This document shows, piece after piece, positions 38,588-59,928 of a DNA stretch of 64,000 nucleotides. The notes beneath the pieces were generated by a model that worked only from the letters and a program-made list of their open reading frames with translations, made no database searches and was not told the origin of the DNA. Each line of letters begins with the position of its first letter. The stretch's first letter is position 1. The stretch is from Anolis carolinensis. Its lineage: Eukaryota. The position numbers and the translations under genes were made by a program. Location: the NCBI RefSeq assembly GCF_035594765.1, contig NC_085842.1, positions 208,641,747 through 208,705,746 of the forward strand. The letters are read 5' to 3'.

Positions 38588-39289
38588 TATTTAAAAAAAG
38601 AGAGAGAAGGCGAAAAGAAGCTTCTCTTGCGCTTATCAACCACACAGATTGACAGATTCGTTGGTAATATTGATTTATGATTTGATTCAGAAAAGCCTCT
38701 CTGTCACGTGACGTTTCCGATGGGTCAAGAGTTGAATTCCAAGTTATTGATTTTTATTGTATTTATTTAGTTTTGGTAGGATTGTGGTTTTCTTGACTTG
38801 CGATCTCTGCCTTTCTTGCCAGAGAGTCTCCTTAGCGAGAATCTTATCCTGCTCTCTCTCGGCCTCCAGCCATGCAAGCTGGCAAAATGAATGCCAGTTT
38901 AATCTTACCCATATTCCTGGACAGCGGGTTTAGGAGCATTTCCTGCTATGGCGACATCCTTCTCCGCGTAGGAAAGAAAACGCTGCCCTCTGTTTACAGA
39001 GAATCCAACAATACAAAACAATTCCCGAAGGATTTCCATTATATTCTTTTCAAGACGGCATGTAACCACATTGACCCCCCCCCCCTTATTGACCCGTCTT
39101 CTTTCCCTCCCCCTTCCAAACTGGGAATCGGTCATTTACAGGAGCCCAGAACTAATAACTAATAACCGTTATCCCTGTTTTTCTCGAATCTCTGCCGACA
39201 CCCATCCTTCCACTATATGATACTGCCTTGCATGAATACTGTAAAGCAAAGGAGTTGTTCCTAAGGATTATCCATCTTCCCCTTCTGTG

Positions 39290-39755
39290 TCAGACTACAC
39301 AGAGAAGCCATTGAAATGCACAAGCTTGTGGACAATTTCAACAGAAAGGAGGAAACCATGAAAATGAACACAATCTCTAGAATCTCTTAAAATCTCTAGT
39401 ATTAGGACAGTAAATAAAGAATAACTCTGAAAACAAGGGAATTCCAGAAATGAAACAATCAGGACCAGCTAACACCTTCCAACAAAGGATTCCCCCAGGC
39501 AGGAATCAGACAGACCTGAAAGCTGCAAGGCTTTTCAATGCTAATCAAGTTGATTAATTGCAACATTCCCACTTGCCTCCAACAGACAAGAGTTCTTTCT
39601 CCCACCCTATTCATCATTCCACAGATATATAAACCCCACTTGCCTAGTTTCCAATAGACCTCACAACCTCTGAGGATGCCTGCCATAGATGTAGGCGAAA
39701 CGTCAGGAGAGAATGCTTCTGGAACATGGCCATACAGCCCGGAAAATGCTCAAAA
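39290..39755 (+). mobile_element. Penelope-like element 3' fragment
   Basis: RLHREAIEMHKLVDNFNRKEETMKMN remnant followed by the pLTR. Confidence 0.85.
39667..39707 (+). ncRNA. Minimal type I hammerhead ribozyme motif (PLE-associated), best-preserved copy
   Basis: CCU | CUGAGGA | U | GCCUGC-CAUAGAU-GUAGGC (6-bp stem II) | GAAA | CG | UC | AGG. Predicted cleavage is 3' of C39704. Confidence 0.7.
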
Positions 39756-40926
39756 ACCCACATCTTCCCCTTGCTTTTTGATATACCTATCTGAGTAGCC
39801 CCGACCCAAGAGCGCGTTGATATCGGGATTGATCGCTCCCTGTGTACAGATAAGGACAGATTTCTCCCCCTTCGTGACCCGGTCATGAGAGGGGATCACG
39901 TGGGTAGGACGCGGGAGCCGGTGACTACTGTTGACCTTTGTATTTATTTTCCATCCGAGGCAAGATTAGAAGCAGCCAAGTCTGTATTATAAACAGTCAC
40001 AGGAACATGAATGGCACCGCCACTTAAAAGTAGAGGAGATTTGCCTTTTAATACGCCCCACTAAAGAGCCATCCTGGAAGGCAGAAAATCTCTCCCCCTT
40101 TTCTCTACCTCAGAAGCAGAGGAGGGGAAGGAGAGACGTTTAGAAAGAGGGATTTAAAAAAAAAATCTGCTCCCTGCCACTAGTGGTGTCCTTTGCCTCT
40201 CCAGGTGGCCTGGAACAATATCTAGAGCCTCTCCTGACCCCCTTTCCCTCCCCGATGGTCCCCTCAGATAAAAGTCTTCTGGGGCTAGACTTTTATTGCA
40301 GGAGTCAGGAAAAGAAGCTGGTCGTAAACTCAGGTAGGTGTCCGGTTTGATCTGTCCAAGCGCAGGAAGTGGAGGGCCGAGGAGGAGGCGGAATCGGGGT
40401 TGTAAACCCTTTGCTTTCCCTTCTTTTCTCCTAAGATGAAACGACCAGGCACTCGACTCGGCGGCGAGGCCTGGGGTGATGGGAGCTGTTGTGTGTGTGC
40501 GTGTGCGTGCAATTAACTCTGCAGAGACAACACTGCAAAGACACCCTCCCCCCCACCTTCATGTCCCACTTCTTCCTTTTTCTTTTGCCAACCCAGCTCT
40601 GATCCCACACGAGTTTTCCTTGCCTGGGCTCTTTCTCGGGCATGTTATGGGTCGTTTTAAGGTCTAAGAGGCCCCAGTCTCCGCTGAGGAGTTCTAAGAA
40701 ACTGACGCTGTTCCCTGAGGCCAGGACTTTGACAAACACAAGCCACATACAGACCCTTTTTGGGCGAGTTGTGTTCAGATTTATAGCTCTTGCAGGAGGT
40801 TGAAGAAAAGGCAGAGAGACAGGCTGCTTGTGAAAGATGAGGAAGCATTGCTTGGAATCTGTTGTCTCCCTGGGTTGAGGTTGATACTCTCGCTATTCAG
40901 ATTAACAAGTGAGAAGAAGGCTTGTT

Positions 40927-41401
40927 GGGTTGCTGTGAGCTTTCCGGGCTGTATGGCCGTGTTCTCTCCTGACGTTTCGCCCACATTTATGGCAGGCATC
41001 CTTAGATGTTGTGAAACATATTGGAAACTAGACAAGGGAGCTTTATATATCTGTGGAAGGCCCAGGGTGGGAGAAAGAACTCAAGTGTGAATGTAGCAAT
41101 TAATCACTTTGATTAGCATTGAAAAGTCTTGCAGCTTCAAGGCCTGGCTGATTCTTGCCTGGGGAAATCCTTTGCTGGGAGATGTTAACTGGCCCTGATA
41201 GTTTCATGTCTGGAATTCCCTTGTTTTCAGAGAGTTACTCTTTATTTACTGTTGTGATCTTGAAGTTTTTTAAAATACTGGTAGCCAGATTGTGCTCATT
41301 TTCATGGTTTCTCCCTTTCTGTTGAAATTGTACACATGCTGGCGGATTTTAGTGGTTTCTCTGTGTAATCTCACATGCTGGTTGTTAGAGTGGTCCAGTA
41401 T
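40927..41401 (-). mobile_element. Penelope-like element 3' fragment (hammerhead core mutated to CUAAGGA)
   Basis: Reverse complement of the pLTR plus the endonuclease tail. Confidence 0.8.
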
Positions 41402-43128
41402 TTCAGTGGAAGACTTGTTATTTCCTTCCCTCCTTTCCTTCTATCTTTGCTTCCCAGTTTGCTTGTTTTCTTACTTCTCTTCTTCCCTCTCTCTTTCCCT
41501 TCCCTTCCTTTTTAACCATCCATCCATCCATCCATCTATCCTTCCGTATTTTCTCCCACCCCTTCCTCCCTCCTTTCCTTTTTCCTTTTTTTAACCTTTC
41601 TTTAATAATAATAACGATAAACTTTATTTATACCCCTCCCCATCTCCCAGAAGGACTCCTGCGGCTTACAACATAAATAAATGCAATGAATAACAGATGC
41701 AAAATAAAATAAGACAGATAATAACAAGTTAATATAAAAGACAAAACAAAACAAAATAGACAATTGAACAAGAAGTAGTAGAAAACATTAGTTTAAACAC
41801 AATGATTCCTATAAATTAAATAAAAGCCAAAATTTAGGACTACTACCAGTGATGCTGTGCATTTCTTATTCAGTGTGGGTGCATTAAAAGATGGCATGCC
41901 AAGGACACTGGGCTTGTTTGGAGACCAGCTAAATGACCTTGAGGTACCTCTGAGTCCACGTTTCGATGTCTTTGTTCCTTTCCATCCTTTCATCCATCTA
42001 TCCTTCCGCATTTTCTCCCTCCCTTCCCACCCTCCTTCTCTTTCTGTCTTCTTTCCTTTCTCCTCCTACCTTTCTCCTTTTCTGGGAGGCTCAGACAAGC
42101 TCCCTAAACCCCAGTGGAGATGAATCACCCACGCAGGCCCAGGGACACGGAGCAAATCCACTGTCCACCCGGGCCTTGCTGAGACAGACCCTACCAACCC
42201 TCGTTGGACCCCAGAGGCTGGGAGTGAGGCTGTGGATGAGGGGCTATTAGCACACCTGATTGCAGGCTCTGAAAAGGATCAACACAAAGAGATGAAAGGG
42301 CTCCCTTTCCACAGGACCTCTGATTTATGGGCCCGGGTGGGAGTGTATCCTGGGATAGGAAGTCCTTTCTTCCTGCGATGGCTGCTTTCCTTCTACTTTG
42401 CTAATTATCGATCTGTCTTTCTGATCTACCTATCTAATAAACCAGCTAAGTGACACCATAACAAAGAATTTCTTTACTTGTCCCCAGGAAATGCTATCCC
42501 AGTATCTTCCTCCTTGTCTCCCTCCCGCCCTCTCTCTGACACGCAGCTTGGAACAAAAGGCATTTTCTCCGCCATCCTGAAACACGTCTATATCCCTTGC
42601 CAGGTGATTTCCAGACTGAAATAAAAGCAGCCCCGTTTCCTTAGTGTGTTGGTACTTCTATTCTCGAATCCTCTTTACTCCTTACCCTTCCCAATAGCCC
42701 TTCAAATACCCTCCGTGGTCAATACATGGAAATATATCCCCGCCTGGAACAACCTGGAACTTTAGGCCTGTGTGGTCGTTCGCTGTTGGGCTCTCTGCGG
42801 GAATTCATCCCCCAACAATGTGGTCGAAAACATGGAGCAGTTGTGGCGTCAATTATGCTAGCCCCGGAGTGTAAATACTGCTCCCCAAGTTGACATTGCA
42901 CAGAAAAATCTATCTATCTGTCGCCCGTACACACGTTGGAAATAGAGTTTCATTATAGGAAGGAATAGATGACATTCTCTTTCTGTTGACCCTCCACCTA
43001 ACTGTGCTCACTTCCTTCTCCCTCCAAAATAATTATGCTCTTATGAAGGGCTCCATCTTGAGATTTGGGTTGCCCACCTTTCTGATCTCTACTCTTTTTG
43101 GAGTTGCATTGGAAGAAGTGTTAGTGTT

Positions 43129-43459
43129 CACAGAATCATAGAGTTGGAAGAGACCTCGTGGGTCATCCAGTCCAACCCCCTTCCAAGAAGCAGTAAAACT
43201 ACATTCAAAGCACTCCGACAGATGCCCATCCAGCTTCTGCTTGAAAGCCTCCAAAGAAATAGCCCCCACCACACTACGGGGCAGAGAGTTCCACTGCTGA
43301 ACAGCTTTCACAGTGAGGAAGTTCTTCCTGATGTTCAGGTGGAATCTCCTTTCCTGTAGTTTGAAGCCATTGTTCCGTCCTAGTCTGCAGGGCAGCAGAA
43401 AACAAGCTTGCTCCCTCCTCCCTATGATTTCCCCTCACATATTTATACATGGCTGTCAT
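43129..43459 (-). mobile_element. CR1 LINE 3' end
   Basis: Minus strand reads MYKYVRGNHREEGASLFSAALQTRT..AVQQWNSLPRSVV..SLEAFKQKLDGHLS and terminates in the ATTCTGTG-type CR1 tail. Confidence 0.9.
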
Positions 43460-44874
43460 GTATACTGCATTGACACTGCATTGGGGTTGACATCATCACC
43501 AAATGCAAGGAGAATTGGAAGACGCTTAGTCCTCTTTTCTCCCTTCCCCCCAAATATGGCGTCTAGCTTTTGTTTGGTGTTGTTGTTTCTGCTACTATTT
43601 TTTTTTATTAAAAGGGCAGATCTGAACCCAGCATCAGAGGCCTGGTTCTGTATATCATTCCAGAGATGTTTCTCCTCCAGCTCCACAGCTCCTCTGGCTT
43701 CTGCAGCCTGACTAATGACAGCTGCAATTGACAAAGCCTGCAGAAATGGCCACCGCCTTCTAACATGTATTTCACGAAACATTCTTTTCCCACATCAGCC
43801 CAAGTTTCTTCAAGTTCCGCCTGCTGCTCTGTGCTTACAGTTTACAGCTTTCTCCGAATCGCAGGGAGCTAATAAACGTTTTATTAAAAGGTTTTGATGG
43901 ATTCACCTTTGGGATTAACTAAGATAATAGTTTATTACACTCTGAAAGATTAAACTGAGTACCCTGGTGGGGAAGAGAGGAAAAAATAAACATTACAAAT
44001 AACAAAGCTCCTCTTTGAACGTAATGTACCATTGTTTGCAGACACAAAACATAACTCAAACAGTTTTGTTTTAAACACACACACACCACGATTTAGATAT
44101 GCATCTGATATTAGAAGACAATTAAAAGGATCTTTCTAGCAGAGGGGATGCCTATACTCATACACAGATCACTGGGGGAATATATGTTTGTGGATAGATA
44201 CGGTTTTTCCTCATTGGAGCTTTACGAGGAAAGAGGGATATGCCTGGTCAATTGGAGGAGCAAAATAAGACGGGTGTGTGTGTGTGTGTCAAGGATGGGT
44301 ATCTTGGAAAGACAAAAGGGAAGGTTAATGGAATTAAAAAGATCCCAGAGCGATCATTCTGTAAAAGAGTTCGTGCTCTTTCCCTCTGTCTCTCGCTTTC
44401 TCCCTTGCAAGGCAGATTCTACCATTCATCCACTCCTTCACATATTTGCATGCTCACAGAACTTAGTGTAACCTGCTTCCTGGCAATTAGGATCAAACAG
44501 TCTGGATCATCATAACAAACATATCTGAAAGCAGGAGCATGCATTCGCTTTTGTTCTACAGCCTATATGATAAAGAGGACAAAATGTGTATAACCAATAT
44601 AGAGGAGTCAAAGAGAAGTGCATCTTCATGTCAGTTTTTACCTAACAATTGGAATCTTCCTGGTTTTATTTTCTGTTATTATTTTGTTAAGAAACGGGAT
44701 TTTTTTCAGAACACCTGTAAGTTTGTGCACACAAAGGGGTGGAGAAAGAGGAAAAAGGTGGATTATCCATACCCAGTAGTATGTTTAAATACGGGATGTG
44801 TAGCTAAATATATTCATATTCATATTCACCATAAAACATACACATGGGATAAATTGTGCATATATTTAACACTA

Positions 44875-45255
44875 TTTTAAAAAACCTCTAAAATCATAAC
44901 AGTAAATACAGAACACCACTCAGAAAACAAAGGAATTCCAGACAGGAATCAATCAGGGCCAGCTAACACCTCCCAACAAAGGATTCCCCCAGGCAGTAAG
45001 CAGCCAGACCTTGAAGCTGAATGGCTATTCAATACTAATCAAGGTGGCCAATTGCAACATTCACACCTGCCTCAAACAGACAAGTGTTCTTTCTCCCACC
45101 CTGGACATTATGCCACAGATATATAAACTCCACTTGACTAGTTTCCAAAAGACCTCACAACCTCTGAGGATGCCTGCCATAGATGTGGATGAAACGTCAG
45201 GAAAGACTGTTTCTGCAACATGGCCATACAACCCGGAACAACTCACAGCAACCCA
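44875..45255 (+). mobile_element. Penelope-like pLTR fragment
   Basis: Same repeat family as the other PLE copies. Confidence 0.85.
45161..45201 (+). ncRNA. Minimal hammerhead motif, core intact, stem II with one mismatch
   Basis: CCT-CTGAGGA-T-GCCTGC-CATAGAT-GTGGAT-GAAA-CGTC-AGG. Confidence 0.55.
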
Positions 45256-45880
45256 TATTTTAAATGTTCGCCTTTTGTCATTTATTGAGGTCTGCAGGTA
45301 TGCTCAGCATTATTTCGAAGTACACAGAGGCATGGCTTCTCATTGAAAGTGTCACTTATTTTTAAAAAATAAAGACAAAACAAGTAACTATCCTTTTCAT
45401 TAGAGGTGATAGTCTCCGTGGTTAACTTGGCTGCTAGAATATTTTTGCTGCGAGTGAATAGAACCGGGGTTTCCCTTAGCCTCATCCACTACCATTTCCA
45501 ACCATTCCTCTGTTGACGTGAACTGGACAATCAATATCTAAGAGTCCCATTAATTTGAGCATTTCTCTTATCAGAACAAAGGAAGGCTGTATGGCTGCAG
45601 ACCCATAGGTGAGGATAAAGCCCACTTAGATCAATGGGATTTAATTCTAAATAGCCCTGACATCCATATAGCGTCTTGAAATGGAGATCACTCTTCCTTT
45701 TCCTCCTTAACTCTTTCCCAATGACACTGGATAATATTGCACTTATCTGGGGATGAAGTTTACCTTTCGATGTCTTTTGCCTCCATCAAAGGTAATTCAA
45801 GGGAGACCAGACATTCAAATCCGCAATCTAGGTGGAGCCTCTGAAGCTACTTTGGTTAATCCAGAGTAGACTTCTCCAAA

Positions 45881-46223
45881 GGGCCCTTCCACACAGCCCT
45901 ATGTCTAGGAAAATCAAAGCAGAAAATCCCACAATATCTGCTTTGAACTGGGTTATCTGAGTCCACACTGCCATATATTCCAGTTCAAAGCAGATAATGT
46001 GGGATTTTCTGCTTTGATTTTGTGGGTTATAGGGCTGTATGGAAAGGCCCAAAGGTTGCTCCAAGATTTCTGGGGCCCCTTCCACAAAGCTGAATAAAAC
46101 CCCACATTAGCTGCTTTGAACTGGAATATATGGCACTGTGGACTCAGATAACCCAGTTCAAAGCAGATGTAGTGGGATTTTCTGCCTTGATATTCTGGGT
46201 TATATGGCTGTGTGGAAGGGCCC
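45881..46223. mobile_element. Two adjacent palindromic MITEs (45881-46050, TSD AAA; 46074-46223)
   Basis: GGGCCCTTCC/GGAAAGGCCC and GGCCCCTTCC/GGAAGGGCCC termini. Confidence 0.8.
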
Positions 46224-48040
46224 TGTGTCAGGGATTACTAAACCACAATGGAGGCATTTAGTACATTCAACAATGTAGTTCTTGACAATACATATATTAA
46301 TGGGGAAAATAATTTCTAACCTTCTGTTCAGGGAAAAAGAGTCTGCTTTCCAGTTTCTCCTGCTCTTTGTTGCCCCCACAGCACCTAAGGATATGGTTTT
46401 CTATACTACAAGAATTTTTTTTATTACAAAACTCACCCCCATAATGCCACAGACACAACCAGCAGGAGTCCTGGGGCACCTCAGATAACCAAAGAAGCTG
46501 GTGGTTTAAAAGCAGCCAGATGGAGAGCTGACTCAAAGCCCCCCCCCCCCCCAAAAAAACCCAAGTTTCTCCCACACAACACCTAACCCCATCTCCAATA
46601 CCATAACATGACGAGGAAGATAGAGTTCTAAATGGGAAAAAATTATGAATATATTACATCTATTCATTGCATTTATTTAAAAGGTTCTCCAGCAGCAAAG
46701 TCTCAACGGTGGCTATTGTTTGTTAGGTCTACCAGGGGATTTTCCAACATATCTTAGGTCTTTTTCCCACCTGGAAAGATTCCTGGATTTTTCAGATGGG
46801 CTGCTCTGCAGATCTACCACAGAGGTGGTAAGATACACATCAGAGAGGTATTTATGACAGAAAATGGGCGCATTCTGTGCATTCCTGTAATTGTTGGGTC
46901 TTGAAAATCCTTATCTGGAATTAGCAGGCATTGTGTGTGTGTATGTGTGCCTTCAAGTTGCTGTCTACTTAGGGTGGCCCCATGGATTTCTTAGGATTTC
47001 TTAAACAAGGATTAAGGGACATCTCCCAAGCTGCTGTGATTCAAAGGATTGTTCTACAAGGACTTAAATCTTATCAAACCTAGAAAACAAGCATGTTTAC
47101 CACTTTAAAAAAAAATCCAACGCCAGATAATTTCCAATAGACAGATCCTGAGAAAGAGAAGAAATGTCATGGTGATGCCAACACACTGCAGTAAAATACA
47201 CAAAAGCCCCCAAAAAGTGTACACACTTACTTGAAAGTTCCTCTTCCTGAATTCAGTACATTTAATTCTGAGTTGACAAGGTGTGGATCTATTACCACAA
47301 AGTAACTGCTATTATTTGTTTTATTTTCATTCCCCCTATACAAATGTTAGGATGTTTAATAGTTAGGGGTGTTTTGCCCACCCTTTAAAATTATCTACAT
47401 AAGAGTAATTTGAAAGAATATTCCCTCTTGATTAAAATCAACCCGTTCTTGGAATTAGTTGTACTAAATACCTTTCTTAGTGTTTTTTATTCCTATTCAG
47501 AAAACAAACTAAAACAAAAGAAAACCAGCAGTGCAAGCCTAATTCCTTCCTGTCTAAAAACAAATTTTCTGAATTCTTCAAATAGGCCAGTCTTGAAGAG
47601 TTCGCGAACTAAGGCGCTTGGGCTAAATAAGTAAATAAATGGATTTGCAATACAGATTGGAATACAGATTGCTGGAGGAAGGGGGGCGGGATGGGGAGGG
47701 TTTTTTTCCCCTTTGCCCAAACCAGATATTTGTTGTTCTTCTTTCAAAAGGGTGAAAAGGGTGGGATGGGGTGGGATGGAGACAGGGGGTAGAGAGAGGG
47801 GCAAGGCGAAGGCAAAAGCAAAAAAACAAAAACAAAAACAAAAAAACAACAATTTCCCCAGCATAAAAATGAAACATCATGTTCGTTTGCCTTTGGGCTT
47901 CATTTTTTCCCTTCTACATTATAACTAGTTATTGAACTCGCTAGAAGATCTAAAGGCCATTTGCGAGGAGACAAATTTCAATGGAGGTTCCCCATCAATA
48001 ACTCCTTGGCAGTGACCTATTGGATCAAGTCAAACAGTTG

Positions 48041-48057
48041 AGGTGAAATTCAGGTCA
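48041..48057 (+). promoter_or_regulatory. DR5 retinoic-acid response element 5' of HOXC4
   Basis: AGGTGA-aattc-AGGTCA, matching the known 5' Hox4-group RARE form. It sits in a conserved-looking block at ~47880-48085. Confidence 0.85.
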
Positions 48058-48779
48058 CGCCGTCTAAGCAATATTAAAATGCGCCCACTTTTTAAAAAGC
48101 CACTTTCAACGAGATTTGAAGAAAATTGAATTCCTGGGAGAGGGAGGGAGGGGTAAAGGGAGGGTGAGGGGGTGGAAAGGGTGTAAGGGGGGGGGGCTTT
48201 GCGGAAGGGAGAGGGGAATTTGTTTGCATGCATGTGCTTTTTCCATCAAACAGGAAGAATTCGTCTCTAGCATTTTGTAAAACGGGAGGAAGGGATAAAT
48301 ATTTATACCTTGGCTTCTTAAGAGGCGAACATAAAAATTCTGTTACTTTTAGTGATATTCTTTGGTTTTCCAAATCGTTTTAACACCCCCCTGATTACTT
48401 TTTTTGACAACAGATTTAAAAGAAGGGAAGGGGGGGGTGAAGAGAAATCAATTAAACATTTGCATATTTCTTTGCATAAATTAGTCCTGTCTCCACGGTG
48501 GGGAAGGGAGAGGGAGGAAAAGGCCTATATGTTGATGTTGTGTGTGTTGCAGAACACCAAACATTTTACTGGAGCTCAGTGATTTATAAGTTGTTGAGCT
48601 TTTTTAATTGCAAGGCCAATATAATTTTGGAGTGCAAAGTGTCAATGAGAAATCAACTGTTTTTGTACTTCTCGGGAGAGAAAAAAGATATCCCATTCTA
48701 GCTACCCCTCTAACGTTATGCATTGAATTTACTAGGAAATGGTAAAAAGGTGGAATTTATCCAGTAAAGTCAGTGGTAA

Positions 48780-48939
48780 CATGCACAATGGAGGACCTTC
48801 TTATAGCAACATCAGAGGCACTCCAAGTGGCCAGCTACTGGTCAAAGGACATTTAGTAATATTTCAAGTTTTTAACTTTGTTTGTGCTTCTAAATACATT
48901 ACAACTGTACCTCCAGTTCGCTTCTGACAGGATAAATAA
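48780..48939 (+). mobile_element. Second Vingi-like LINE 3' end
   Basis: Homologous to 13114-13270. Tail TCGCTTCTGACAGGATAAATAAA, with imperfect 8-bp TSD AGTGGTAA/AGTGGCAA. Confidence 0.65.
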
Positions 48940-49005
48940 AGTGGCAAAATTAATTTTTCTTTTCAAAATGAGGAGGGACTGAATAGAAGAAAGGGGTGAG
49001 TTTGA

Positions 49006-49165
49006 GGGCCCTTCCACAAGCCCTATATTCCAGAATATCAAGGCAGAAAATCCCACTGTATCTGCCTTGAACTGGTTGTCTGAGTCCACACTGCCATATA
49101 TTCCAGTTCAAAGCAGAAAATGTGGGCTTTGATATTCTGAGATATAGGGCTGTTTAGAAGGGCCC
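49006..49165. mobile_element. Palindromic MITE (TSD TGA)
   Basis: TGA|GGGCCCTTCC...AGAAGGGCCC|TGA. Confidence 0.85.
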
Positions 49166-51285
49166 TGAGTGTGACAATAAACTTTGATCATTTCTTGGAA
49201 AAGTCTGGATTTTGATCTTTAGAGACAGGAATTATATTTCGAGCTTCTATCCCATTCTTCCTAAATGGCATTTATTGTTCCTTTATTATTTATTATTAAT
49301 TTTCTTCGAGGAAGTGCTTATTTGTTTCCCCAAACCACCCAGGACCAATACTCCAAAGCCAGGGGGGAGAGAGTGCTTTCCCTTCATGGAGGCCCTGAAA
49401 TGTAAGCTGGCGGCTTGAGGTCGGCCTTTAGAACGGATTTTCCTCTTTTTTTCCTTCCCATAAAACCTTAATTCGAATAGGGCTCACGTGGCAAGGGCTT
49501 TGTCTTATGATTATTACTAGCATTATGACTATTATGATTACTAAACACTGAAAGAGCAAGAAATCTCGGCGTCAGAGTGTTTCCAACCCCCCTCAATCCC
49601 AGCCTCTCCCCCCCCCCCCCCCCTTATTTTGGTCCAAGATGCACAGATTGCAAATGGCGAGAGGTGTAGGTTACCAAGCGGTCAGTATGGTAATCGCTTG
49701 CACAATGAATCCGCAGGGACAATGAGCACTTATTTTTCTTCAGTACTGTCAAGGAGGCGCTTTGTACTCAGAAATAGTCCTGAAAATGGTAGCCAGATAG
49801 ATACACGGGGTGCTGGGCTTTTTTCTCTCTCTCCTGCAAACCAATTTTTGGCCAGGGAAGGACTTTCAGGGAAGGGGTCAGAGATATTTTTCTAAAAAAA
49901 ATAAAATCTATGCGTTTTTATTTATTTTCCCCCAGTTGTCACTCAAAAGATCATAACAATAATTGTGTTTTCCTGACCTAGTTGTATTACTTGTTTTTAA
50001 AAAAAATAAGGAGGGGGAGACAGAGGGCAGAAGTGTGAGAGAGGCGAGAGGGATGCTCTAGGAACAAAAGGGATTTGTTTCCCTTAAAAAAAATTGCCCA
50101 CACATTCTTGGAACTTTCTTTGAGAGAACACATAAAAGAAACTCACCGGAACACTTTAAGAAAAGCATTTTTATTTTTATTTTATTTTAAAAGTTTATAA
50201 ACAGAAAAAAGAATATATAAACTTTGCAATTTAATTCATATCCGGGAGGAGAGAAAAACAGGAATATGTTAAGATATAGAAACTGACAGAAACCAACAAA
50301 GAGGTAAAACAAACAACCCCAGCATGGAAAATGAAAACAACAAATATCTTATAGCTTTCCTAGGAGTATGTCGTCCTAGGGAAGATATAATCCTATATGT
50401 ACTTACTCGGGAGAGAGGCTTACTTCCGAGTAAACATGGTCAAAATCAGGAGGCTGTGTTTTGCTGGCGGATCTCATGCAAAGAAAGAGCGAAATCTTAC
50501 TTCCAAGTAGCTTTACATACATCCTGCTTCTTGATTCATTTCATGCTTACTCGGACTTTAAACCCCAGTGCATAAATCTGCTATCTCATATGGAAATAAG
50601 ACTCGCTGGAAACAATGTGTCCTGATTTCCAGTTATTATTATCTCCCATAGCAGCATTGCCCTTTCTTCCGTGAGCCCCTAAAAGAATAATTAAGAGGAT
50701 AATAATCAGGATATAGTTTTATTTGTTTAGATCGCCCTTATGAATCAGGAACTTTAAGGTACATGAGCCAATTATCCCCTCCAAAGTATACAGTCTACTG
50801 AGGAGTCTCTATTGTGGCCAATGGGAGTTAAAAGCCACTGAGTTCAGTGAGGTTTACTTCCTAATAAATGTGCTTAAAAGTTGTAGCTTCAGTTGGTAAA
50901 TCTTTCATCCTTCCTCCTTATCTCTTCATTTGAATTCTATTAAGGTCCCCAATGGGCACTCTGCATTTCAAATCAAGTACTTGAAGGCTGTACTAAATTC
51001 AGTGGGAACCAGCTCAGCACATATTGAACAGCACAAAAACATATGGTCTACTCAGATGTAAGTCTCTCTGATTTCAGTGAGGCTAACTCCCAAGCAAGTG
51101 TGTATAAGATTGCTATTAGATATAAGACTTTTGATAGTATATGTAAAAGAGTATAATTTACACTGCTGCTTCTGATACTGCTAATCATAGTGTTTGTAAC
51201 AGCATAGGATTGGTAGTAAAAATTAAAGTGGAGCACAAAGAGTACTCATATTACTAAAATCAGAACAAATACTTTTTTAGAATAT

Positions 51286-51708
51286 GAACTCACCTGATTT
51301 TGTTCACTCTATACATTCTCCATTGAAAGAGAATGTTGAAGCTTGGAATCTATAAGATATGCAGGTTTGACAGGAATAATACTGAGTGAGGGAGAAATAA
51401 TCTTGTTCCCCAAACACAAACTTGGGGAGAATGAGTTTCATAAAACTATTACAATCCATAAAAGCCTGATGGTAGCAGTATTGTAGATGTTCGTAGAAAC
51501 AGTAGAGATACTTGCTTAACATTATTCCCAGTTGGTGAGTATTTCTATATTCCAGCATCTATCCTATAATTTCAAAAAAGAAATAAAATGAATGTTCTCT
51601 CTCTTTCTCCCTCACTCAGTATTATTCCTTTCTGCATATCTTTTAGGTTCCAAGCTTCACCATTCTTTCAATGGAAAATGTATAGAGTGAACAAAATCAG
51701 GCAAGTTC
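51286..51708. repeat. Long inverted repeat (~110-bp arms), probably an old fold-back/MITE
   Basis: Arm 51286-51397 is the imperfect reverse complement of 51604-51708 (e.g. CCTGATTTTGTTCACTCTATACATT vs AATGTATAGAGTGAACAAAATCAGG). Confidence 0.8.
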
Positions 51709-52236
51709 TCAATAGGAATGACATTGTAAAGATAGTCTGAAATGTTTCACTTACACTAGGTCTGGCCACCATTTCCTCCATTTTTCTTCTTCTTTTGGAG
51801 CAAACCACCCTTCTCCTCCTCAGAAGCTATCAATCAATCAACCAGCAAGCCAGCTGACAATTCCACATATTATTTGTGCATGAAAAACTCTTTCAGGGTG
51901 AACTTGGCCCAAATATTTCATGAAGTAATAAAAAAGAGGCTAATAAAATAGTAGATTTTTATGTGGTCACCTGAATAGAAATTAAGGTAATCTTTCAGGG
52001 CCCAGTTCTCAGAATGAGGAGAAGGTAGGTCCCACCCTGTCAAAATTCTTCAGAAACATGCATGCTCTACTTGGGAACAGCTTAACTTGTTTAACGACTT
52101 TTTTTGGAAGTCTTGAGGGCTGCTCTCTTCCCTTTAGTCATTAAAAGAAAGACTTATGAAGAACATCCTTTGGTGTGGGCATGGAGAGAAGTAATCTTCC
52201 CCTCTTCTCCCTGCAATAGACAGCCCAAATTCTCCA

Positions 52237-52318
52237 GTCGTTTATATGTACCCTGTAGAATCGAATTTGTGTGAGCACCTCAATCACAAATTCGTCTCTA
52301 GGGGAGTATATGGACGAT
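52237..52318 (+). ncRNA. MIR10C: mir-10 family precursor (mir-10c, HoxC paralogue)
   Basis: 5p arm UACCCUGUAGAAUCGAAUUUGUG (52249-52271) and 3p arm CAAAUUCGUCUCUAGGGGAGUA, with a basal stem GTCGTTTATATG/TATATGGACGAT. It lies at the canonical position just 5' of Hox4. Confidence 0.95.
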
Positions 52319-52695
52319 GCAGAGCTTTGTTAAAGGTTCTCCTTTCTTTGTGGTCTTCTCCCAGATGTTGCAGTGAACGGGCCAATATCTGAGACTTCAG
52401 AGGTAGTGTGTTTAAAGGTCTTAAGAAGCACATGTACACACACCTTTTGAGGCAGGTAAAGAGATCTGTCGGAAAGAAGAACCCTCTTACAGCCAGGTCT
52501 TGAATAAATAATTAGAATAACAGAGAAAGTACAGCGTGCTCCTGATAATAAAATCCGGAATTATTACTTCTTTCTTGCAAAGAAGGAGCAGCAGTGGCTG
52601 TAAAGGCAGCTCAGAGCTCACACAAGCCCTTGCCAGAGAGAGAAGGGAGGGAGGAAGAGAGGGAGAGAGAGAGAGACCTAACCATTTCAAGTGAC

Positions 52696-52830
52696 TGATT
52701 TATGGCGTTTTACAGCCCCATAAAAACTGTTACAACCAGCCCAGAGCCTCCGACACCGCTGGCACATTTAGTCTAATAAATAAAACATAAACAGTTAACT
52801 TTATGTGTCACTTTTATTGTTATCAAGTAA
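52696..52830. promoter_or_regulatory. Pbx-Hox/Cdx site cluster between mir-10 and HOXC4
   Basis: TGATTTATGG (52696-52705), CCATAAAA, TTTATG and TTTTATTG within 135 bp. Confidence 0.55.
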
Positions 52831-53324
52831 AATATTGCAATGCCCTGCAAGCTATGATTTTCAACTATAATTGTTATCAAGCAGTACAAGGGATTAATCC
52901 GACTGTCGGTGCCCCATCTTCTTAATGTAAGCTATAGATAAAGCCTTTTAACTGCAATAACTGCACTCTTTAAAATGTTTGCTTCCCATCCCAGCTTGCT
53001 GAACCTACCCAGAGGTCTGTTTATGTATCTTATGGGGGAACACAGGCACACTCATACAGGGCTGCTTCTGATCATCCCTGACTCAAGATTGAAATCATCA
53101 GAGATTGTGAATGGACTCTTCCTGCTTCTGCAGGAATTTCTGGCTGGGAAGAAGAAGAGAATATTACATCTCTTGTATGTGAATGGACACTTTCCTTGCT
53201 TCTTTACTTCCCTCATTTAAACTAAATATGCATGCATGTTCTTTCCCACAACAATGCCAGATCCTCTATGATTAACATTGAGCAGGTTTGTATAAAGCAA
53301 GCACCCAACTACCAGTTTCTTCCA

Positions 53325-53459
53325 GGGCCCTTCCACACAGCCACATAACTCAGAATATCAAGGCAAAAAATTCCCACAATATCTGCTTTGACCAGACTGT
53401 CATATATCCCCCTTCAAAGCAGATAAAGTGGGATTTTATTCAGCTGTGTAGAAGAGGCC
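53325..53459. mobile_element. Palindromic MITE (internally deleted)
   Basis: GGGCCCTTCCACACAGC...GCTGTGTAGAAGAGGCC. Confidence 0.75.
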
Positions 53460-54133
53460 TCAGACTCCTCCACCTTTCCATCCCCTGGTTAGAAGAAGAG
53501 CAGGTTGGTGGCCTTGCCATCTGGCTGGAAGGAACTTTCCCTGCTTTTCATCCTCGCCATCCTCTCTTATGAAAACCTCATCAGACCTCCCTTAAGCAAA
53601 GGTTGATGAGCCTTTCTAGAGCACTCTCACTCCAAATGACGCAAAGATGATTTGCATACCCCCTTCCCCAACCTTCTTCCTCCTCCCCCCCCCCCCCCCC
53701 AGGTAACCTGCCTTCTTTGTCTCTCTGCCTGCAAACAATTGGATGACAGATGTTGAACTTCCTTTAGTTTTTTGAATTTTGTGTATGTGTGTATGTTGGG
53801 AGTGGGGGTGGGACTAGATCTGCAGACAAGGATCCCAGCGGTGTCCTGGATGGGGGGGAGGGGGAGAAGGGAGGAGGGGGGGAGCACATCTCTCCCCACA
53901 GCTTTTAAGGTGAAACAAGCAGAGCACATTTGAGCATGCTGCAGTGTTTCAAAAATGGTTGTTTTTCCTGCTTAAGGCTGACTTAGCTCTTGGTTGTCTA
54001 CAAGAGAGGACTTGCTGTGTATCTAGAAAACAAGGGGTGGGGGTAGTTTGGGGGAAGAGATTAATCATGCAGAATGTACTCTTCCACACCATCTCTCTGT
54101 CAAATAAGTGAAATAATATTTAGATCATTGCTC

Positions 54134-54566
54134 ATGAACAAAATCTGGCTACCAGTATTAAAAAAACCTCTATATTCAGGACAGTGAATAAAGAACAACA
54201 TTCATAAAACAGAGGAATTCCAGACTTGAATCAACTAGGGCCAGCTAATACCTCCCAACAAAAGATTCCCTCAGGCAGTAAGCAGCCAGACCTTACTGCT
54301 GAAAGGCTATTAAATGCTAATCAAGGTATCCAATTGAAACATTCACACCTGCCTCAAACAGACAAGAGTCCTTTCTCCCACCCTGGACCTTCCAGAGATA
54401 TATAAACCTCACTTGCTTAGTTTCCAACAGACCTCACAACCTCTGAGGATGACTGCCATAGATGTGGGCGAAACGTCAGGAGAGAATGCTTCTGGAACAT
54501 GGCCATACAGCCCGGAAAACTCGCAGCAATCCAGTGATTCTGGCCATGAAAGCCTTCGACAACACA
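54134..54566 (+). mobile_element. Penelope-like pLTR ~300 bp upstream of the HOXC4 core promoter
   Basis: Full 3' end ...AAAGCCTTCGACAACA. Confidence 0.85.
54440..54480 (+). ncRNA. Minimal hammerhead motif, core intact
   Basis: CCT-CTGAGGA-T-GACTGC-CATAGAT-GTGGGC-GAAA-CGTC-AGG, with one stem II mismatch. Confidence 0.55.
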
Positions 54567-54861
54567 TTGAATTTACTTCTATTAATATTCTGATCATTGA
54601 TACTACCTTTTGAAGACGAGGAGCACAGGACTGCCTGGCTGTGGCTGCAAGGTCTGCCCCTTCCTCCCCCCAACCTCTCTCTCTCTGTTTCTTTCTCTCT
54701 TTCTCTCTCACACACCCCTCTTTTGCTCTGAGGGGAAGGGGATCACACCAACAACAACAAGAACACACGCACCCGCGCGCGCGCACCCACCCACCCACAC
54801 ACACACAAATTGGATACATTTTGAATAAGCTTTTGGTTCCTTATCCGGGGACTCGCTCGGC

Positions 54862-54922
54862 TGGCGTGATTGGCGCAAATAGTCACATGGTGAAACTAAC
54901 TTTACGGGGTCGCCAGCTAGTA
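54862..54922 (+). promoter_or_regulatory. HOXC4: HOXC4 proximal promoter (CCAAT + GTCACATGG)
   Basis: CGTGATTGG...AGTCACATGGTGAAACTAACTTTACGGGGTCGCCAGCTAGTA, the motif string typical of group-4 Hox promoters. Confidence 0.75.
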
Positions 54923-55078
54923 NNNNNNNNNNNNNNNNNNNNNNNNNNNNNNNNNNNNNNNNNNNNNNNNNNNNNNNNNNNNNNNNNNNNNNNNNNNNNN
55001 NNNNNNNNNNNNNNNNNNNNNNNNNNNNNNNNNNNNNNNNNNNNNNNNNNNNNNNNNNNNNNNNNNNNNNNNNNNNNN
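54923..55078. other. N-run (156 N) hiding the HOXC4 5' UTR and first ~31 codons
   Basis: Coding sequence resumes at HSPEYY directly after the gap. Confidence 0.9.
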
Positions 55079-55487
55079 CACAGTCCGGAATATTACAGCC
55101 GGACCAGGGAGCCCAGTTTCCAGCACCATCACCAGGAATTGTACCCTCCGCCACCTCCTCCTCCGCCACCACCGCCACCTCCTCCTCCTCCTCCTCCTCC
55201 ACCGCGACCCAGCTACCCCGAGCGCCAGTACAGCTGTGCCAGCCTCCAAGGTCCCGGCAACCCCTCCGTGCATCCGAGGGGCCATGGACCACCGCCTGGG
55301 GGCCACCATCTCCCCGAGAAGCCCCCGCAGCCGCAGCTCTGCGACCAAACGGCTCTTCCCAGCGCCGCCACCTCGCCATCCCCAGCTCCCCCAGCCTGCA
55401 ACCAGCAAAACCCCGACCACCCCAGCAGCACGGCCTCTAAGCAGCCCATAGTCTACCCCTGGATGAAAAAAATCCACGTCAGTACGG
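55079..55487 (+). CDS. HOXC4: Homeobox protein Hox-C4, exon 1 (visible part; ATG expected near 54986 inside the gap)
   Basis: HSPEYYSRTREPSFQHHHQELY(P20)RPSYPERQYSC...KQPIVYPWMKKIHVST. Donor G|GTAGGC at 55488. Confidence 0.95.
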
Positions 55488-55656
55488 GTAGGCAACTTTT
55501 GCTCCTCTCCTCTCCTTCCCCTTTCCTCTCTCTCCCTCTGCTTCCTTGTCCCTGCCTCCTCTCTCTCGCTCTCTCCCTCGCTGTCTGCCTCTCTCCCCCT
55601 CCATCACCTCCTTTTTGCCTTCAACGAGAGTCTTTGGGTTAGCACAATTGAGCGGG

Positions 55657-55702: not shown

Positions 55703-55943
55703 CCAAGCTAGTCTGGGCAGCCCGAGCCATGTGGTTCGTTCTGTTATGTATGTGTGAAACTCCAGCGGCTTTGCGAGGGGTGCATAAATAATTCAGGCTC
55801 TTTGCAAGCCAGGGAAACCCCTTCTTAATCCGAGGGAAAGTCCTGGGTTCTTTATAACCCATTGAGCTGATGACTTCTTCTCTCTCCCCCCCCCCCTTCT
55901 CTCTCTTTCTCCCCCTCTCTTTCCCTTGAGCCACTGGAGATCT

Positions 55944-56145
55944 GGGTTGCTGTGAGTTTTCTGGGCTGTATGGCTATGTTCCAGAAGCATTTTCTCCTGA
56001 AGTTTCGCCTGCATCTATGGCAGGCATCGTCAGAGGTTGTGAGGTCTGTTGGGAACGAGGCAAGTGGGATTTATATATGGCTAGACAGCCCGGAATACTC
56101 ACAGCAACCCAGTGATTCCGGCCATGAATGCCTTTGACAACAAAA
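55944..56145. mobile_element. Inverted PLE insertion in the HOXC4 intron with an 11-bp TSD
   Basis: ACTGGAGATCT at 55933-55943 and 56146-56156. An antisense hammerhead-like motif lies at 55996-56036 (CUGACGA, perfect stem II, GAAACUUC). Confidence 0.9.
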
Positions 56146-56210: not shown

Positions 56211-56356
56211 TCCTTCCAGATAGCTGAATAAAATCCACATTATTTGCTTTGAACTGGAATATATGGCAGGGCGGACTCAGATAACCCAGTTCAAAGCAGA
56301 AAATTTGGGGTTTGCTGCCTTGATATTCTGGGATATAGGGCTGTGTGGAAGGGCCC
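56211..56356. mobile_element. Palindromic MITE in the HOXC4 intron
   Basis: Right TIR GCTGTGTGGAAGGGCCC is intact; the left TIR is degenerate. Confidence 0.75.
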
Positions 56357-56489
56357 TCTGTCTTTCTCTCCTTTCAGTCCTCCTTCCCTCCCTCCTTCAC
56401 TTCCCTTTCCGTCTCTGTGTCTTTCTCTGTCTTTCTCTCATTCCTTCCCTCCCTCCTTGGTGATTCACGGTGCTCTTTGGTTTTTCCAG

Positions 56490-57847: not shown

Positions 57848-59778
57848 AAACAAAACAAAAGCAACCAACAACCATTGAGTGTGACACAGATTGATTTTGG
57901 AATATCTGGTGAGTTCTTTCGCTTCTTTGCTTTCTGTGAAATAGGCAAATGGGACTGGAGGAGGGGGTTAATGTACCACATCAGGTCCCTCAGTAAGGGT
58001 ATTTTCTCTATTAAGATTCCCTCCCCTGCTTTTGGTACCACTTGGAAGAAGTCAGTGCCCAATGTGCCACTGATTTTAGGGACAGTGGAGTCACCAATGG
58101 GATAGTATGTTTGGAATGAAATTCTGCCACCAAGTCCTAACCATGGAAGTGTCTATGTATTTTATTGGAAATATCTGTCACTGTGTATCCTTCTCTGAAA
58201 TTAGAGGTCTGTGTTTGGTGCTGGCCTATGTGTCTTGCTGGATTTGTTCCTCCTTTGTAAAATGTATTTATCCTTCCTTGCATAAGATGTCAGTTCCTAT
58301 CCCATGTTTTTTTTAAAGTTACTTCCTTTCTTTAAATGTCTGTGTAAATAACTTTAGCTGAAGTGAACCTTTGCTCCTGTACTTTGAATAAATTGTTGAG
58401 GTTGAGACTGTGGTAGATATTCCAGGGAGGTATTGTAGCGAATCAGTGTTTGTTTACTTCCCTGAGGGAAAGAGAAAGGGAGGTTGGCCAAGGAGTGTGG
58501 AAGAAGTGTATTTGCCTAGGGAGCACTTCCAGTGTGCTTGTGCATGTATATGAATGAGAAAATAGTCTAGATAGATAGATAATAGATTAGTAAGTGCCTT
58601 TTAAAGATGCACTTATTGTTCTATTGGGCCTGGTCTAGAAACAGAAAAACATGGGAAAGGGTTGTATTCTGTATGTTTTGCTCTGGAGCCTTGCTTCATG
58701 ACCTTTGCAAAATGTAAATGTTCAAATATTTTCAATTTCAGTTATTTCTAGTTAGTTCCAAAGCATTTTAAAATCCAGATTATCTAGATTATTTTGAACA
58801 GTGTCCCTGCCTTTGGGTCAGGTGCCTAATGAGTTACAAGAAGACACTGCAATTCTTTATACTATTTATATTGGGGTACAGCCAGGATAGTGCAATTGTC
58901 TGGTGGAGCAAGGTTTCTGAAACCTGGAGGGACAGAAGTTTGAAAAATAACAGGTTTTATTATCCTCCATAATCAAGATATTCCTCATGCAAATGTTTTC
59001 AGCATTCCTGTAAAAGGCAGAGGCAAGGAAAAATGAGGAGGGCACTTGGACAAGTCTTGCTGAAGTTAAGGGAGAATCTCTACTCATCCCAAATGGGTCA
59101 GAGGGAAATGTAAAGTCTCTAGTCCAGATCAGTTTAGAAACAGCAGCCAAAGATCCAGGATATCAGCATATCAATGCTACGATCCTTTGCCTAACAGCTA
59201 TTATTTTGTAAAAGTGATGTCCACATATTGCCCCTATTTTTGGGTTAAGAAAATACCCGATGTAAGAGCATGACATAAATCTATTTATCCTAGTTTTACA
59301 GAGCAAAAGGTGAGGATGAGTGCATATTCTGGGTTCCCTTGAATTGCTTGCACTGTTTCTTACTGCCCTTGTCAATTTCAGGCCTGCTCATTCACCTTAG
59401 GTTTGTTAGATGAAATGGCAGAATGGTTGGGGGCAAAACACAGCTACAGAGCTCTGCACACTTACTGTTGGAAGCAGTGGGATCTGCTCCTGAGTAAGCT
59501 TGAATGTCATTGGGCAGCACACTGAATCTATCACATGTTTTTATCAATGTATAAAATGCCTAAATGTTTCCTAGCTTACCGCTGAGATAAATAGAAACAC
59601 TAACTTTCTGCCCAATGTCCTCCCACAGAGTCCTGAAAGTGAACAAAGGGTTAAAAAGTCCTTTCTGGAGTTATATATATTTGGATAATATTCTAAAGTT
59701 GATTCTCACTTCACTACCCTTCCTCCTTCCCTACACACATGCATGCAAAAATAGAAGAATGTATAAGGGTTCCTCTAA

Positions 59779-59928
59779 GGGCACTTCCACACAGCCATAT
59801 AGCCCAGAATATTAAGTCAGAAAATCCCGCAGTATCTGCTTTAAACTGGGTTATCTAAGTCCACACTGGCATATATTCCAGTTCAAAGCAGATGATGTGG
59901 GATTTTATTCAGCTGTGTGGAAGGGGCC
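59779..59928. mobile_element. Palindromic MITE (TSD TAA)
   Basis: TAA|GGGCACTTCC...GGAAGGGGCC|TAA. Confidence 0.85.

What the first reader, a model, noticed from the sequence alone, without database searches (positions are those of the whole stretch)
39667..54480. Hammerhead-ribozyme motifs, carried by Penelope-like elements, sense to Hox transcription between HOXC5 and HOXC4
Seen: three + strand copies (39667-39707, 45161-45201, 54440-54480) keep every hammerhead core base in the order CCU-CUGAGGA-U-[stem II]-GAAA-CG-UC-AGG. Stem III is reduced to a palindromic ACGU, which cannot close in a monomer. Established: Penelope-like pLTRs encode such minimal type I hammerheads, which can cleave as dimers. 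Inference: these copies would lie inside introns of any long HOXC4/pri-mir-10c transcript from the distal promoters, so self-cleavage could interrupt or process read-through Hox transcripts in lizards. Caveats: the copies are 5-9 kb apart and stem I is only 3 bp, so they may be inert fossils.
Basis: partly seen in the sequence, partly recalled or inferred. Interest (0 to 1): 0.8.

Follow-up and report, generated by a model that had tools for sequence, protein, structure and literature searches.

The report
Penelope transposon hammerhead fossils near HOXC4
The three hammerhead-ribozyme motifs are real, but they are ordinary decayed copies of a published lizard Penelope-like (Poseidon) retrotransposon, which left at least ten copies on both strands of this HoxC region, and nothing indicates that they cut Hox transcripts.

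Summary
The 41-mers at 39667-39707, 45161-45201 and 54440-54480 (+) carry CUGAGGA, GAAA and ACGUC in hammerhead order.

They are not independent motifs. All are copies of the pLTR/ORF junction of a Poseidon-type Penelope-like element (PLE). They match the published Anolis carolinensis Poseidon_Ac junction at 39-40 of 41 bases. They also share its start codon at the base of stem II, its cut site 26 nt after the ATG, and its two tail ends.

One of those, at 36080-36120, also has an intact core. Six of the ten copies have lost the core or the palindrome. Copies B and C also have a damaged stem II.

Intact copies are no commoner than neutral decay predicts (P about 0.1) and show no strand bias. 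No Rfam hammerhead model matches. Predicted folds lock the core and the cleavage site in competing hairpins. In read-through RNA, copies A and C pair with nearby antisense copies.

Published work found no cleavage of this ribozyme without the element's own protein, and no RNA-seq ends at the cut site.

The scan has already noted this motif elsewhere in this genome. It is already known and of low interest.

The parts
39667..39707 (+). Copy A hammerhead motif. The core and the ACGU palindrome are intact, stem II is 6 bp (GCCUGC/GUAGGC) and stem I is 3 bp. The predicted cut is after 39704. The former element start codon is at 39676-39678.
   Evidence: (1 mismatch to the Poseidon_Ac junction 41-mer).
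45161..45201 (+). Copy B hammerhead motif. The core is intact, but stem II is weakened by a C10.2-A11.2 mismatch, G10.1-U11.1 and two further wobbles. The predicted cut is after 45198.
   Evidence: 2 mismatches; energy of the HHR-like fold 0.0 kcal/mol.
54440..54480 (+). Copy C hammerhead motif. The core is intact, and stem II has an A10.2-G11.2 mismatch. The predicted cut is after 54477. It lies 2.1 kb downstream of mir-10 and about 440 bp upstream of the masked run at the start of HOXC4 exon 1.
   Evidence: (1 mismatch).
36080..36120 (-). Copy F hammerhead motif on the minus strand. The core is intact (CUGAAGA) and stem II is rich in G-U pairs.
40968..41008 (-). Copy E motif, dead: CUAAGGA (G5 changed to A) and a changed stem I. 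It is the inverted partner of copy A, 1.3 kb downstream.
37282..37322 (-). Copy D motif, dead: G5 to A, G12 to A, and CG to GG in the palindrome.
38120..38161 (+). Copy G motif, dead: the CUGANGA box is scrambled with a 1-nt insertion, and the palindrome reads AGGU.
7986..8019 (+). Copy H motif, dead: a deletion removes the palindrome, the cleavage site and the 3' strand of stem I.
55996..56036 (-). Copy I motif in the HOXC4 intron. The core bases are kept, but the palindrome is broken (ACUU). It is the inverted partner of copy C.
10857..10883 (+). Copy J motif, dead: a deletion removes CUGANGA and the 5' strand of stem II.
39265..39760 (+). Element copy A. It is a 5'-truncated Poseidon PLE insertion holding the end of the endonuclease ORF, the pLTR with a TATATAAA box, the HHR, and a short tail ending near +85 from the ATG.
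44873..45258 (+). Element copy B: pLTR, HHR and a short tail ending near +85.
54134..54571 (+). Element copy C: pLTR, HHR and a long tail ending near +119 to +123. That end is the AC-rich reverse-transcription (RT) start site of the paper.
37195..38245 (.). Head-to-head inverted pair of truncated PLE insertions: D (37195-37622, minus) and G (37620-38245, plus). Both have long tails.
52242..52314 (+). mir-10 hairpin, the HoxC-cluster copy. It fixes the direction of Hox transcription.
   Evidence: RF00104, 60.6 bits, E = 1e-12.

Best explanation
The three motifs are the hammerhead ribozyme at the pLTR/ORF junction of a Poseidon-clade Penelope-like retrotransposon. This is the family of Poseidon_Ac (PAc) of Anolis carolinensis.

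PLE reverse transcription starts about 85 or about 115 nt inside the next tandem unit, and copying is often cut short at the 5' end. Nearly every insertion therefore carries the junction, and with it the hammerhead. At least ten such truncated insertions landed in this HoxC interval on both strands. They now differ by about 14-20% from one another and are decaying at roughly the neutral rate.

In the active element the ribozyme overlaps the start codon. According to the published biochemistry it cleaves only with help from the element's own protein. I take the copies near HOXC4 and mir-10 to be inert fossils with no role specific to Hox. The family assignment and the decay pattern are shown here; their inertness in vivo is inferred.
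For: (1) Identity.
- The 41-mer made by joining the 3' end and the 5' start of the published Poseidon_Ac entry matches A and C at 40/41, B at 39/41, and E and F at 38/41.
- The ATG sits at A9-U-G10.1 and the cut falls 26 nt after the start codon, as stated for PAc.
- Upstream translations read ...EHLMNQPGHSILIENKEMLDHSNNHNVRLHREAIEIHKDVDNF. This is about 82% identical by eye to the C-terminus of the Poseidon_Ac endonuclease.
- Downstream translations read MPAIDVGETSGENASGTWPYSPENSQQ..., about 80% identical to its N-terminus.
- Copies end near +85 or near +116 to +123. These are the two RT start sites and the 30-40 bp optional tail of the paper.

(2) Dispersed repeat. There are ten copies, 6 on + and 4 on -, with variable 5' ends.

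(3) Decay.
- Six of ten copies have lost the core or the palindrome.
- 1.85 intact copies are expected at the flank rate and 4 are seen (P = 0.096).
- There is no strand effect (Fisher 0.57).
- Core columns show a pairwise difference of 0.113 against 0.196 elsewhere (P = 0.08). The whole 41-mer is at the 30th percentile of sliding windows.

(4) Poor ribozyme prospects.
- No Rfam hammerhead family matches, even at E <= 10.
- The MFE fold pairs CCUCA with UGAGG of the core, and places C17 and the 3' strand of stem I in a second hairpin. The HHR-competent fraction is 3e-4 for A and 1e-7 to 1e-9 for B, C and F.
- The double-hammerhead energy for A is -20.3 kcal/mol, against -37.8 for two separate monomers.
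- In 2-kb read-through RNA, the HHR of A pairs with antisense copy E at 39 of 41 nt, and the HHR of C pairs with antisense copy I at 38 of 41 nt.

(5) Literature.
- The PAc HHR is inactive without PAc protein, and no RNA-seq reads begin or end at its cut site.
- Single min-HHRs are inactive and dimers are weak.
- Accumulation of transposable elements in squamate Hox clusters is already described.
Against: - Core columns are somewhat less variable than the rest of the element, and more copies are intact than expected. Both trends fall short of significance with ten copies. Both are also expected if the source elements kept the core under selection.
- Copy A has a fully intact motif, and Poseidon_Ac is reported as active in A. 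carolinensis. Its protein could therefore in principle assist cleavage in trans.
- Nearest-neighbour folding ignores tertiary contacts and co-transcriptional kinetics.
- No RNA data could be examined here, so transcription through the sites and RNA ends at the sites are untested.
- The species of the window is coded, so the assignment to Anolis is inferred.
Confidence: 0.9

Rival explanations
1. The sense-strand hammerheads self-cleave, alone or as dimers, inside long HOXC4/pri-mir-10c transcripts. They thereby interrupt or process Hox read-through RNA in lizards.
For: - Three copies with an intact core lie sense to Hox transcription between HOXC5 and HOXC4.
- Copy C lies between mir-10 and HOXC4 exon 1.
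- Domesticated intronic hammerheads exist in amniotes: RECK, CTCL and DTNB.
Against: - The copies are 5.5 and 9.3 kb apart, and helix I is 3 bp.
- B and C have a mismatched stem II.
- The HHR-competent fraction is 3e-4 or less.
- A and C pair with antisense copies in read-through RNA.
- The same ribozyme in the active element needs PAc protein and leaves no detectable ends in RNA-seq.
- No conservation signal exceeds neutral decay.
- An equally intact copy lies antisense.
- The same motif is scattered through this genome (these are unchecked notes).
Confidence: 0.03
2. Protein-assisted cleavage in trans. In cells where an active Poseidon element is expressed, its RT/endonuclease protein binds host transcripts that carry fossil junctions. 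It then promotes hammerhead cleavage there, as a side effect rather than as regulation.
For: - The PAc HHR is described as a protein-assisted ribozyme, and the element as apparently active.
- Copy A is 40/41 identical with all stems intact.
- Copy C keeps the long tail with the AC-rich RT start region.
Against: - Even for the active element, no RNA-seq ends were seen at the cut site.
- A and B lack the long tail.
- It is unknown which RNA features the protein needs.
- Expression of the Hox region and the element in the same cells is untested.
Confidence: 0.05
3. The insertions matter, if at all, through features other than the ribozyme. The pLTR carries a TATA box about 45 nt upstream of the hammerhead, so copy C could start sense transcription into HOXC4. 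The inverted pairs A/E, D/G and C/I could form long double-stranded RNA that is edited or diced.
For: - A TATATAAA box is present in every pLTR copy.
- The paper places the element's promoter in the pLTR.
- Copy C ends about 355 bp before the masked start of HOXC4 exon 1.
- The MFE folds show long inverted-repeat duplexes.
- Another reader noted a PLE-tail hairpin in the HOXC5 3' UTR.
Against: - No expression data are available.
- The copies are old and mutated.
- Hox clusters of squamates tolerate many transposon insertions without any known effect.
Confidence: 0.08
4. The motifs are chance matches to a loose hammerhead consensus.
For: No Rfam hammerhead model matches them.
Against: - Four exact matches are found against 0.01 expected.
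- Homology extends over 360-430 bp between copies.
- The motifs match a published, biochemically tested ribozyme at 39-40 of 41 bases.
Confidence: 0.005

Closest known systems
PAc / Poseidon_Ac hammerhead ribozyme of Anolis carolinensis (Mob DNA 2024, PMC11167929; Repbase entry Poseidon_Ac)
   Same: - The 41-nt motif is the same (39-40 of 41 bases).
- The ORF start codon sits at the base of stem II, and the cut falls 26 nt after it.
- The flanks are the same: the endonuclease C-terminus and the pLTR upstream, the ORF N-terminus downstream.
- The two tail ends are the same, at about +85 and about +115.
   Different: - The window copies belong to an older, diverged subfamily. Their flanking coding remnants are about 80% identical, and their pLTR carries about 20 extra bases.
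- They are 5'-truncated and have no intact ORF.
- Six of ten have lost the motif.
- They are single dispersed copies, not tandem units.
Minimal hammerheads (min-HHR) of metazoan Penelope-like elements (Cervera and de la Pena 2014, PMC4209133)
   Same: - Type I topology.
- Long helix II (6 bp) and short helix I (3 bp).
- One unpaired base at the 5' end of stem II.
- Helix III reduced to a small palindrome.
- Located in the pLTR and scattered as single motifs from truncated elements. Nearby pairs on opposite strands also occur.
   Different: Nothing essential. The 2014 paper names turtle and snakes among reptiles. The lizard element was covered by the 2024 paper.
Domesticated intronic hammerheads of amniotes (RECK, CTCL and DTNB; Rfam Hammerhead_HH9 and HH10)
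   Same: Type I hammerheads lying sense within long transcription units, probably derived from retroelements.
   Different: Those are canonical hammerheads with loop-loop tertiary contacts, and they are conserved at orthologous positions across birds and mammals. The copies here match no Rfam hammerhead model, lack a defined loop 1, show neutral-like decay, and have no shown orthologous conservation.

Membership tests
Poseidon_Ac / PAc junction hammerhead | Sequence of the pLTR-end/ORF-start junction carrying the ribozyme | tested here: met
   The junction 41-mer read from the published entry matches A and C at 40/41, B at 39/41, and E and F at 38/41.
Poseidon_Ac / PAc junction hammerhead | ORF start codon at the start of stem II, with the cut site 26 nt downstream of the start codon | tested here: met
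   In copy A the ATG is at 39676-39678 and C17 at 39704. B and C have the same spacing.
Poseidon_Ac / PAc junction hammerhead | Flanked upstream by the GIY-YIG endonuclease C-terminus and the pLTR, and downstream by the ORF N-terminus | tested here: met
   The translations, compared by eye with the Poseidon_Ac_1p translation, are about 82% (37/45) and 80% (33/41) identical. Pfam gave no hit on these 41-52 aa pieces, which are too short for it.
Poseidon_Ac / PAc junction hammerhead | Insertions end at one of two internal RT start sites (the tail signature) | tested here: met
   Seven copies end near +85, and three (C, D, G) end near +116 to +123.
Poseidon_Ac / PAc junction hammerhead | Protein-assisted self-cleavage | not testable with these tools
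   Shown for the consensus element in PMC11167929, not for these copies.
PLE min-HHR (Cervera and de la Pena 2014) | Core CUGANGA, GAAA and UH in type I order | tested here: met
   A, B, C and F meet it. D, E, G, H and J fail it. I keeps the core but loses the palindrome.
PLE min-HHR (Cervera and de la Pena 2014) | Helix II of 6-8 bp with a bulged base at its 5' end, helix I of 2-5 bp, and helix III absent or a small palindrome | tested here: met
   Copy A has 6 bp in helix II after an unpaired U, CCU/AGG as helix I, and the ACGU palindrome. B and C have 5 of 6 pairs, including wobbles.
Rfam hammerhead families (Hammerhead_1, _3, _II, HH9, HH10) | Score at or above the family's gathering threshold | tested here: not met
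   There was no hammerhead hit at the gathering threshold, at E <= 10 on the whole window, or on a 101-nt piece around copy A. This is expected, because those models require a helix III.
Domesticated intronic hammerheads of amniotes | Conservation at the orthologous position across species, beyond the flanks | not testable with these tools
   No eukaryotic genome collection is on hand. Within the window, core retention fits neutral decay.

The most novel reading that the evidence does not exclude
Host pre-mRNAs that carry well-preserved Poseidon junction fossils in the sense orientation (copy A, and copy C upstream of HOXC4) are cleaved at the hammerhead site when the active element's protein is present. 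Bursts of Penelope activity in embryo or germline would then truncate HoxC4/pri-mir-10 read-through transcripts and many other host RNAs.
Probability: 0.03. Interest if true: 0.6.

Novelty: already known. Interest (0 to 1): 0.1.

Why it matters

The evidence points the other way. This is the published junction ribozyme of a very abundant lizard retrotransposon, present here as decaying copies on both strands.

The useful results are these:
- An exact family assignment.
- A full inventory of the ten copies and their defects.
- The finding that insertion ends match the two published RT start sites.
- The finding that squamate HoxC DNA tolerates sense-oriented copies close to mir-10 and HOXC4.

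Tried and rejected
- **Rfam cmscan.** Run at the gathering threshold and at E <= 10 on the whole window, and on a 101-nt piece. There was no hammerhead hit. This says that Rfam models do not cover min-HHRs, not that the motif is absent.
- **Pfam on the three endonuclease C-terminal remnants (41-52 aa).** No hit, because they are too short. One earlier call failed on a frame with stop codons.
- **Post-insertion selection on the core.** Pairwise column diversity gave P = 0.08, and the count of intact copies gave P = 0.096. Neither is significant, and both are confounded by conservation in the source elements.
- **Strand bias of intact copies.** None found (Fisher 0.57).
- **Sequencing runs.** 24 coded runs were returned and none is on record as RNA. 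The large holders look like whole-genome data.
- **Read laying on 49000-54900.** No letters of 52754-52838 were sent to any tool afterwards. No N run was filled.
- **Typed published sequence.** I did not type the published Poseidon_Ac sequence into any alignment tool. Comparisons beyond the 41-mer pattern were made by eye.
- **Consensus.** No consensus of the window copies was built.
- **Chance-motif explanation.** Rejected.

Full report
**Observation.** They read CCU-CUGAGGA-U-[stem II]-GAAA-CG-UC-AGG. A pattern search for CTGANGA, 8-30 bases, then GAAACGTC finds 4 matches in the window against 0.01 expected from shuffles. The fourth match lies on the minus strand at 36083-36117. Allowing three mismatches to the full 41-mer adds a fifth copy at 40968-41008, also on the minus strand. 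Helix I is only CCU/AGG. The A15.1-C-G-U16.1 palindrome cannot close a hairpin in one molecule.

**Gene context.** Homeoboxes of HOXC6 type (near 17244), HOXC5 type (near 23072) and HOXC4 type (near 56657) all lie on the + strand. HOXC4 exon 1 runs from inside the N run 54923-55078 to about 55500. Rfam finds mir-10 at 52242-52314 on the + strand with 60.6 bits. The three copies are therefore sense to Hox transcription and lie between HOXC5 and HOXC4, as claimed. Copy C is close to HOXC4. Its element ends near 54570, about 355 bp before the masked run that holds the start of exon 1.

**What the motifs belong to.** BLAST of the flanks against the window shows that each motif sits in a 360-430 bp repeat. 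The repeat has at least ten copies:
- On the + strand: A 39265-39760, B 44873-45258, C 54134-54571, G 37620-38245, H 7747-8061, J 10776-10937.
- On the - strand: D 37195-37622, E 40926-41428, F 36024-36279, I 55938-56078.

The copies share 3' ends but have variable 5' ends, the signature of truncated reverse transcription. Upstream of the longer copies an ORF remnant reads ...EHLMNQPGHSILIENKEMLDHSNNHNVRLHREAIEIHKDVDNF.... From the ATG inside the motif the frame reads MPAIDVGETSGENASGTWPYSPENSQQPSDSGHESLRQH.

**Match to the published element.** A 2024 paper describes PAc, the Poseidon Penelope-like element of Anolis carolinensis (PMC11167929). Four of its statements can be checked against the window:
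[quoted passage not shown] - Reverse transcription starts at two internal sites, one of them in an AC-rich stem-loop 111-118 nt into the ORF.
- These sites explain an optional 30-40 bp tail on genomic copies.

The window copies fit on every point. The ATG occupies A9-U-G10.1, and C17 is 26 nt past it. Seven copies end near +85, and three (C, D, G) end near +116 to +123.

The Repbase entry Poseidon_Ac is printed in the paper's supplement. It ends with ...cctcacaacctctgagg and begins with atgcctgccatagatgtgggcgaaacgtcagg. Joined in tandem, these give exactly the 41-mer used as the pattern. A and C match it at 40/41, B at 39/41, and E and F at 38/41. By eye, the ORF remnants are about 82% (37/45) and 80% (33/41) identical to the C- and N-termini of Poseidon_Ac_1p.

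The motif also has every feature that Cervera and de la Pena listed for PLE min-HHRs (PMC4209133). These are a long helix II, a short helix I, a bulged base 5' of stem II, a small palindromic helix III, scattered single copies, and nearby pairs on opposite strands. The family assignment is therefore firm. The window copies belong to an older, diverged Poseidon subfamily.

**State of the ten copies.**
- A, B, C and F keep the core and the ACGU palindrome.
- D and E have G5 changed to A. D has also lost G12 and the CpG.
- G has a scrambled CUGANGA box.
- H has lost the cleavage site, and J the CUGANGA box, both by deletion.
- I has ACUU in place of ACGU.
- Among the intact four, only A has a clean 6-bp stem II. 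B has a C-A mismatch and G10.1-U11.1. C has an A-G mismatch. F is rich in G-U pairs.

**Is the core protected?** Mean pairwise difference is 0.113 in the 12 core columns against 0.196 in the rest of the element (P = 0.08 by resampling columns). The 41-mer as a whole is unremarkable, at the 30th percentile of sliding windows. At the flank rate, 1.85 intact copies in ten are expected and 4 are seen (P = 0.096). Intactness does not depend on strand (Fisher 0.57). The mild trend is what one expects if the source elements kept the ribozyme while they were active. There is no evidence of selection after insertion, though ten copies give little power.

**Would they cleave?** No Rfam hammerhead family matches at any threshold tried. 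That reflects the missing helix III.

Folding of 67-nt pieces gives the same picture for all four intact copies. The 5' flank CCUCA pairs with UGAGG of the catalytic box. C17 and the 3' strand of helix I sit in a second hairpin, CAGGAG/CUUCUG. Only stem II agrees with the hammerhead fold (z-scores -1.85 to +0.34).

Forcing helices I and II leaves a fraction of 3e-4 of the ensemble for A, and 1e-7 to 1e-9 for B, C and F. The double-hammerhead pairing of two A molecules scores -20.3 kcal/mol, against -37.8 for two separately folded monomers.

In 2-kb read-through + strand RNAs, the hammerhead of A pairs over 39 of 41 nt with the antisense copy E, 1.3 kb downstream. The hammerhead of C pairs over 38 of 41 nt with copy I in the HOXC4 intron. 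These are equilibrium predictions without tertiary contacts or kinetics, so they weigh against activity but do not prove its absence.

The experimental literature agrees:
- The PAc ribozyme shows no cleavage without PAc protein, and the authors found no RNA-seq reads beginning or ending at its cut site.
- A single min-HHR of Schistosoma mansoni was inactive, and dimers were only weakly active, mostly at unphysiological magnesium.

**Transcription.** This could not be tested. The run search returned 24 coded runs, none on record as RNA. The strongest holders have contig totals of genome size and are probably DNA.

**Comparison with what is known, and novelty.** The motif, its element, its position over the start codon and its biochemistry are all published. 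So is the accumulation of transposons in squamate Hox clusters. They are canonical, Rfam-detectable and conserved at orthologous sites, and none of that is shown here.

The scan's own notes list 136 hammerhead entries in this genome. They include a follow-up that filed a tandem array of the same junction as an ordinary by-product of an abundant lizard transposon. I treat these as leads, but they agree with what I derived independently.

**Verdict.** The Hox-processing inference is unsupported and unlikely. The thing is already known and of low interest. The most novel reading left open is protein-assisted cleavage of host transcripts at well-preserved fossil junctions such as copy A. I put it at about 3%.

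Noticed in passing
window 37195-38245: Two truncated Poseidon insertions lie head to head: D on the minus strand and G on the plus strand, abutting near 37620. This gives a roughly 1-kb imperfect inverted repeat. Both hammerheads are dead.
   Followed up: partly
window 23411-23523, 7317-7405, 10712-10776, 56077-56142: Short pieces of the PLE tail (the ...ggccatacagcccggaaaactcacagcaaccc... part) occur without the hammerhead, some as small inverted pairs. The pair at 23417-23516 is the hairpin that another reader noted in the HOXC5 3' UTR. It is therefore Penelope-derived.
   Followed up: partly
window 31084-31166 and 33762-33844: Two palindromic hairpins hit Rfam mir-5408 on both strands at 48-54 bits, well below the gathering score of 90. 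They look like copies of a hairpin-forming transposon related to that miRNA family.
   Followed up: no
window 45880-46000 and at least 12 other places (e.g. 46104-46224, 49005-49123, 56237-56357, 59777-59898, 26522-26641): A second interspersed repeat family of about 120 bp, at 80-90% identity, is scattered on both strands through the HOXC5-HOXC4 interval and the HOXC4 intron.
   Followed up: no
window 54396-54403 (and the same position in every pLTR copy): A TATATAAA box lies about 45 nt upstream of the hammerhead. In copy C it points toward HOXC4 exon 1, whose masked start begins about 520 bp downstream. It could act as a transposon-derived promoter. This is untested.
   Followed up: no
window 22500-22690: A long (TG/TA)-rich microsatellite lies just upstream of the HOXC5 homeobox exon. 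It gives many spurious miRNA-family hits at sub-threshold scores.
   Followed up: no
window 21332-22000 and 55079-55500: HOXC5 exon 1 encodes a long His/Gln run, and HOXC4 exon 1 a run of about 20 prolines.
   Followed up: no
They lie about 450 nt downstream of mir-10.
   Followed up: no
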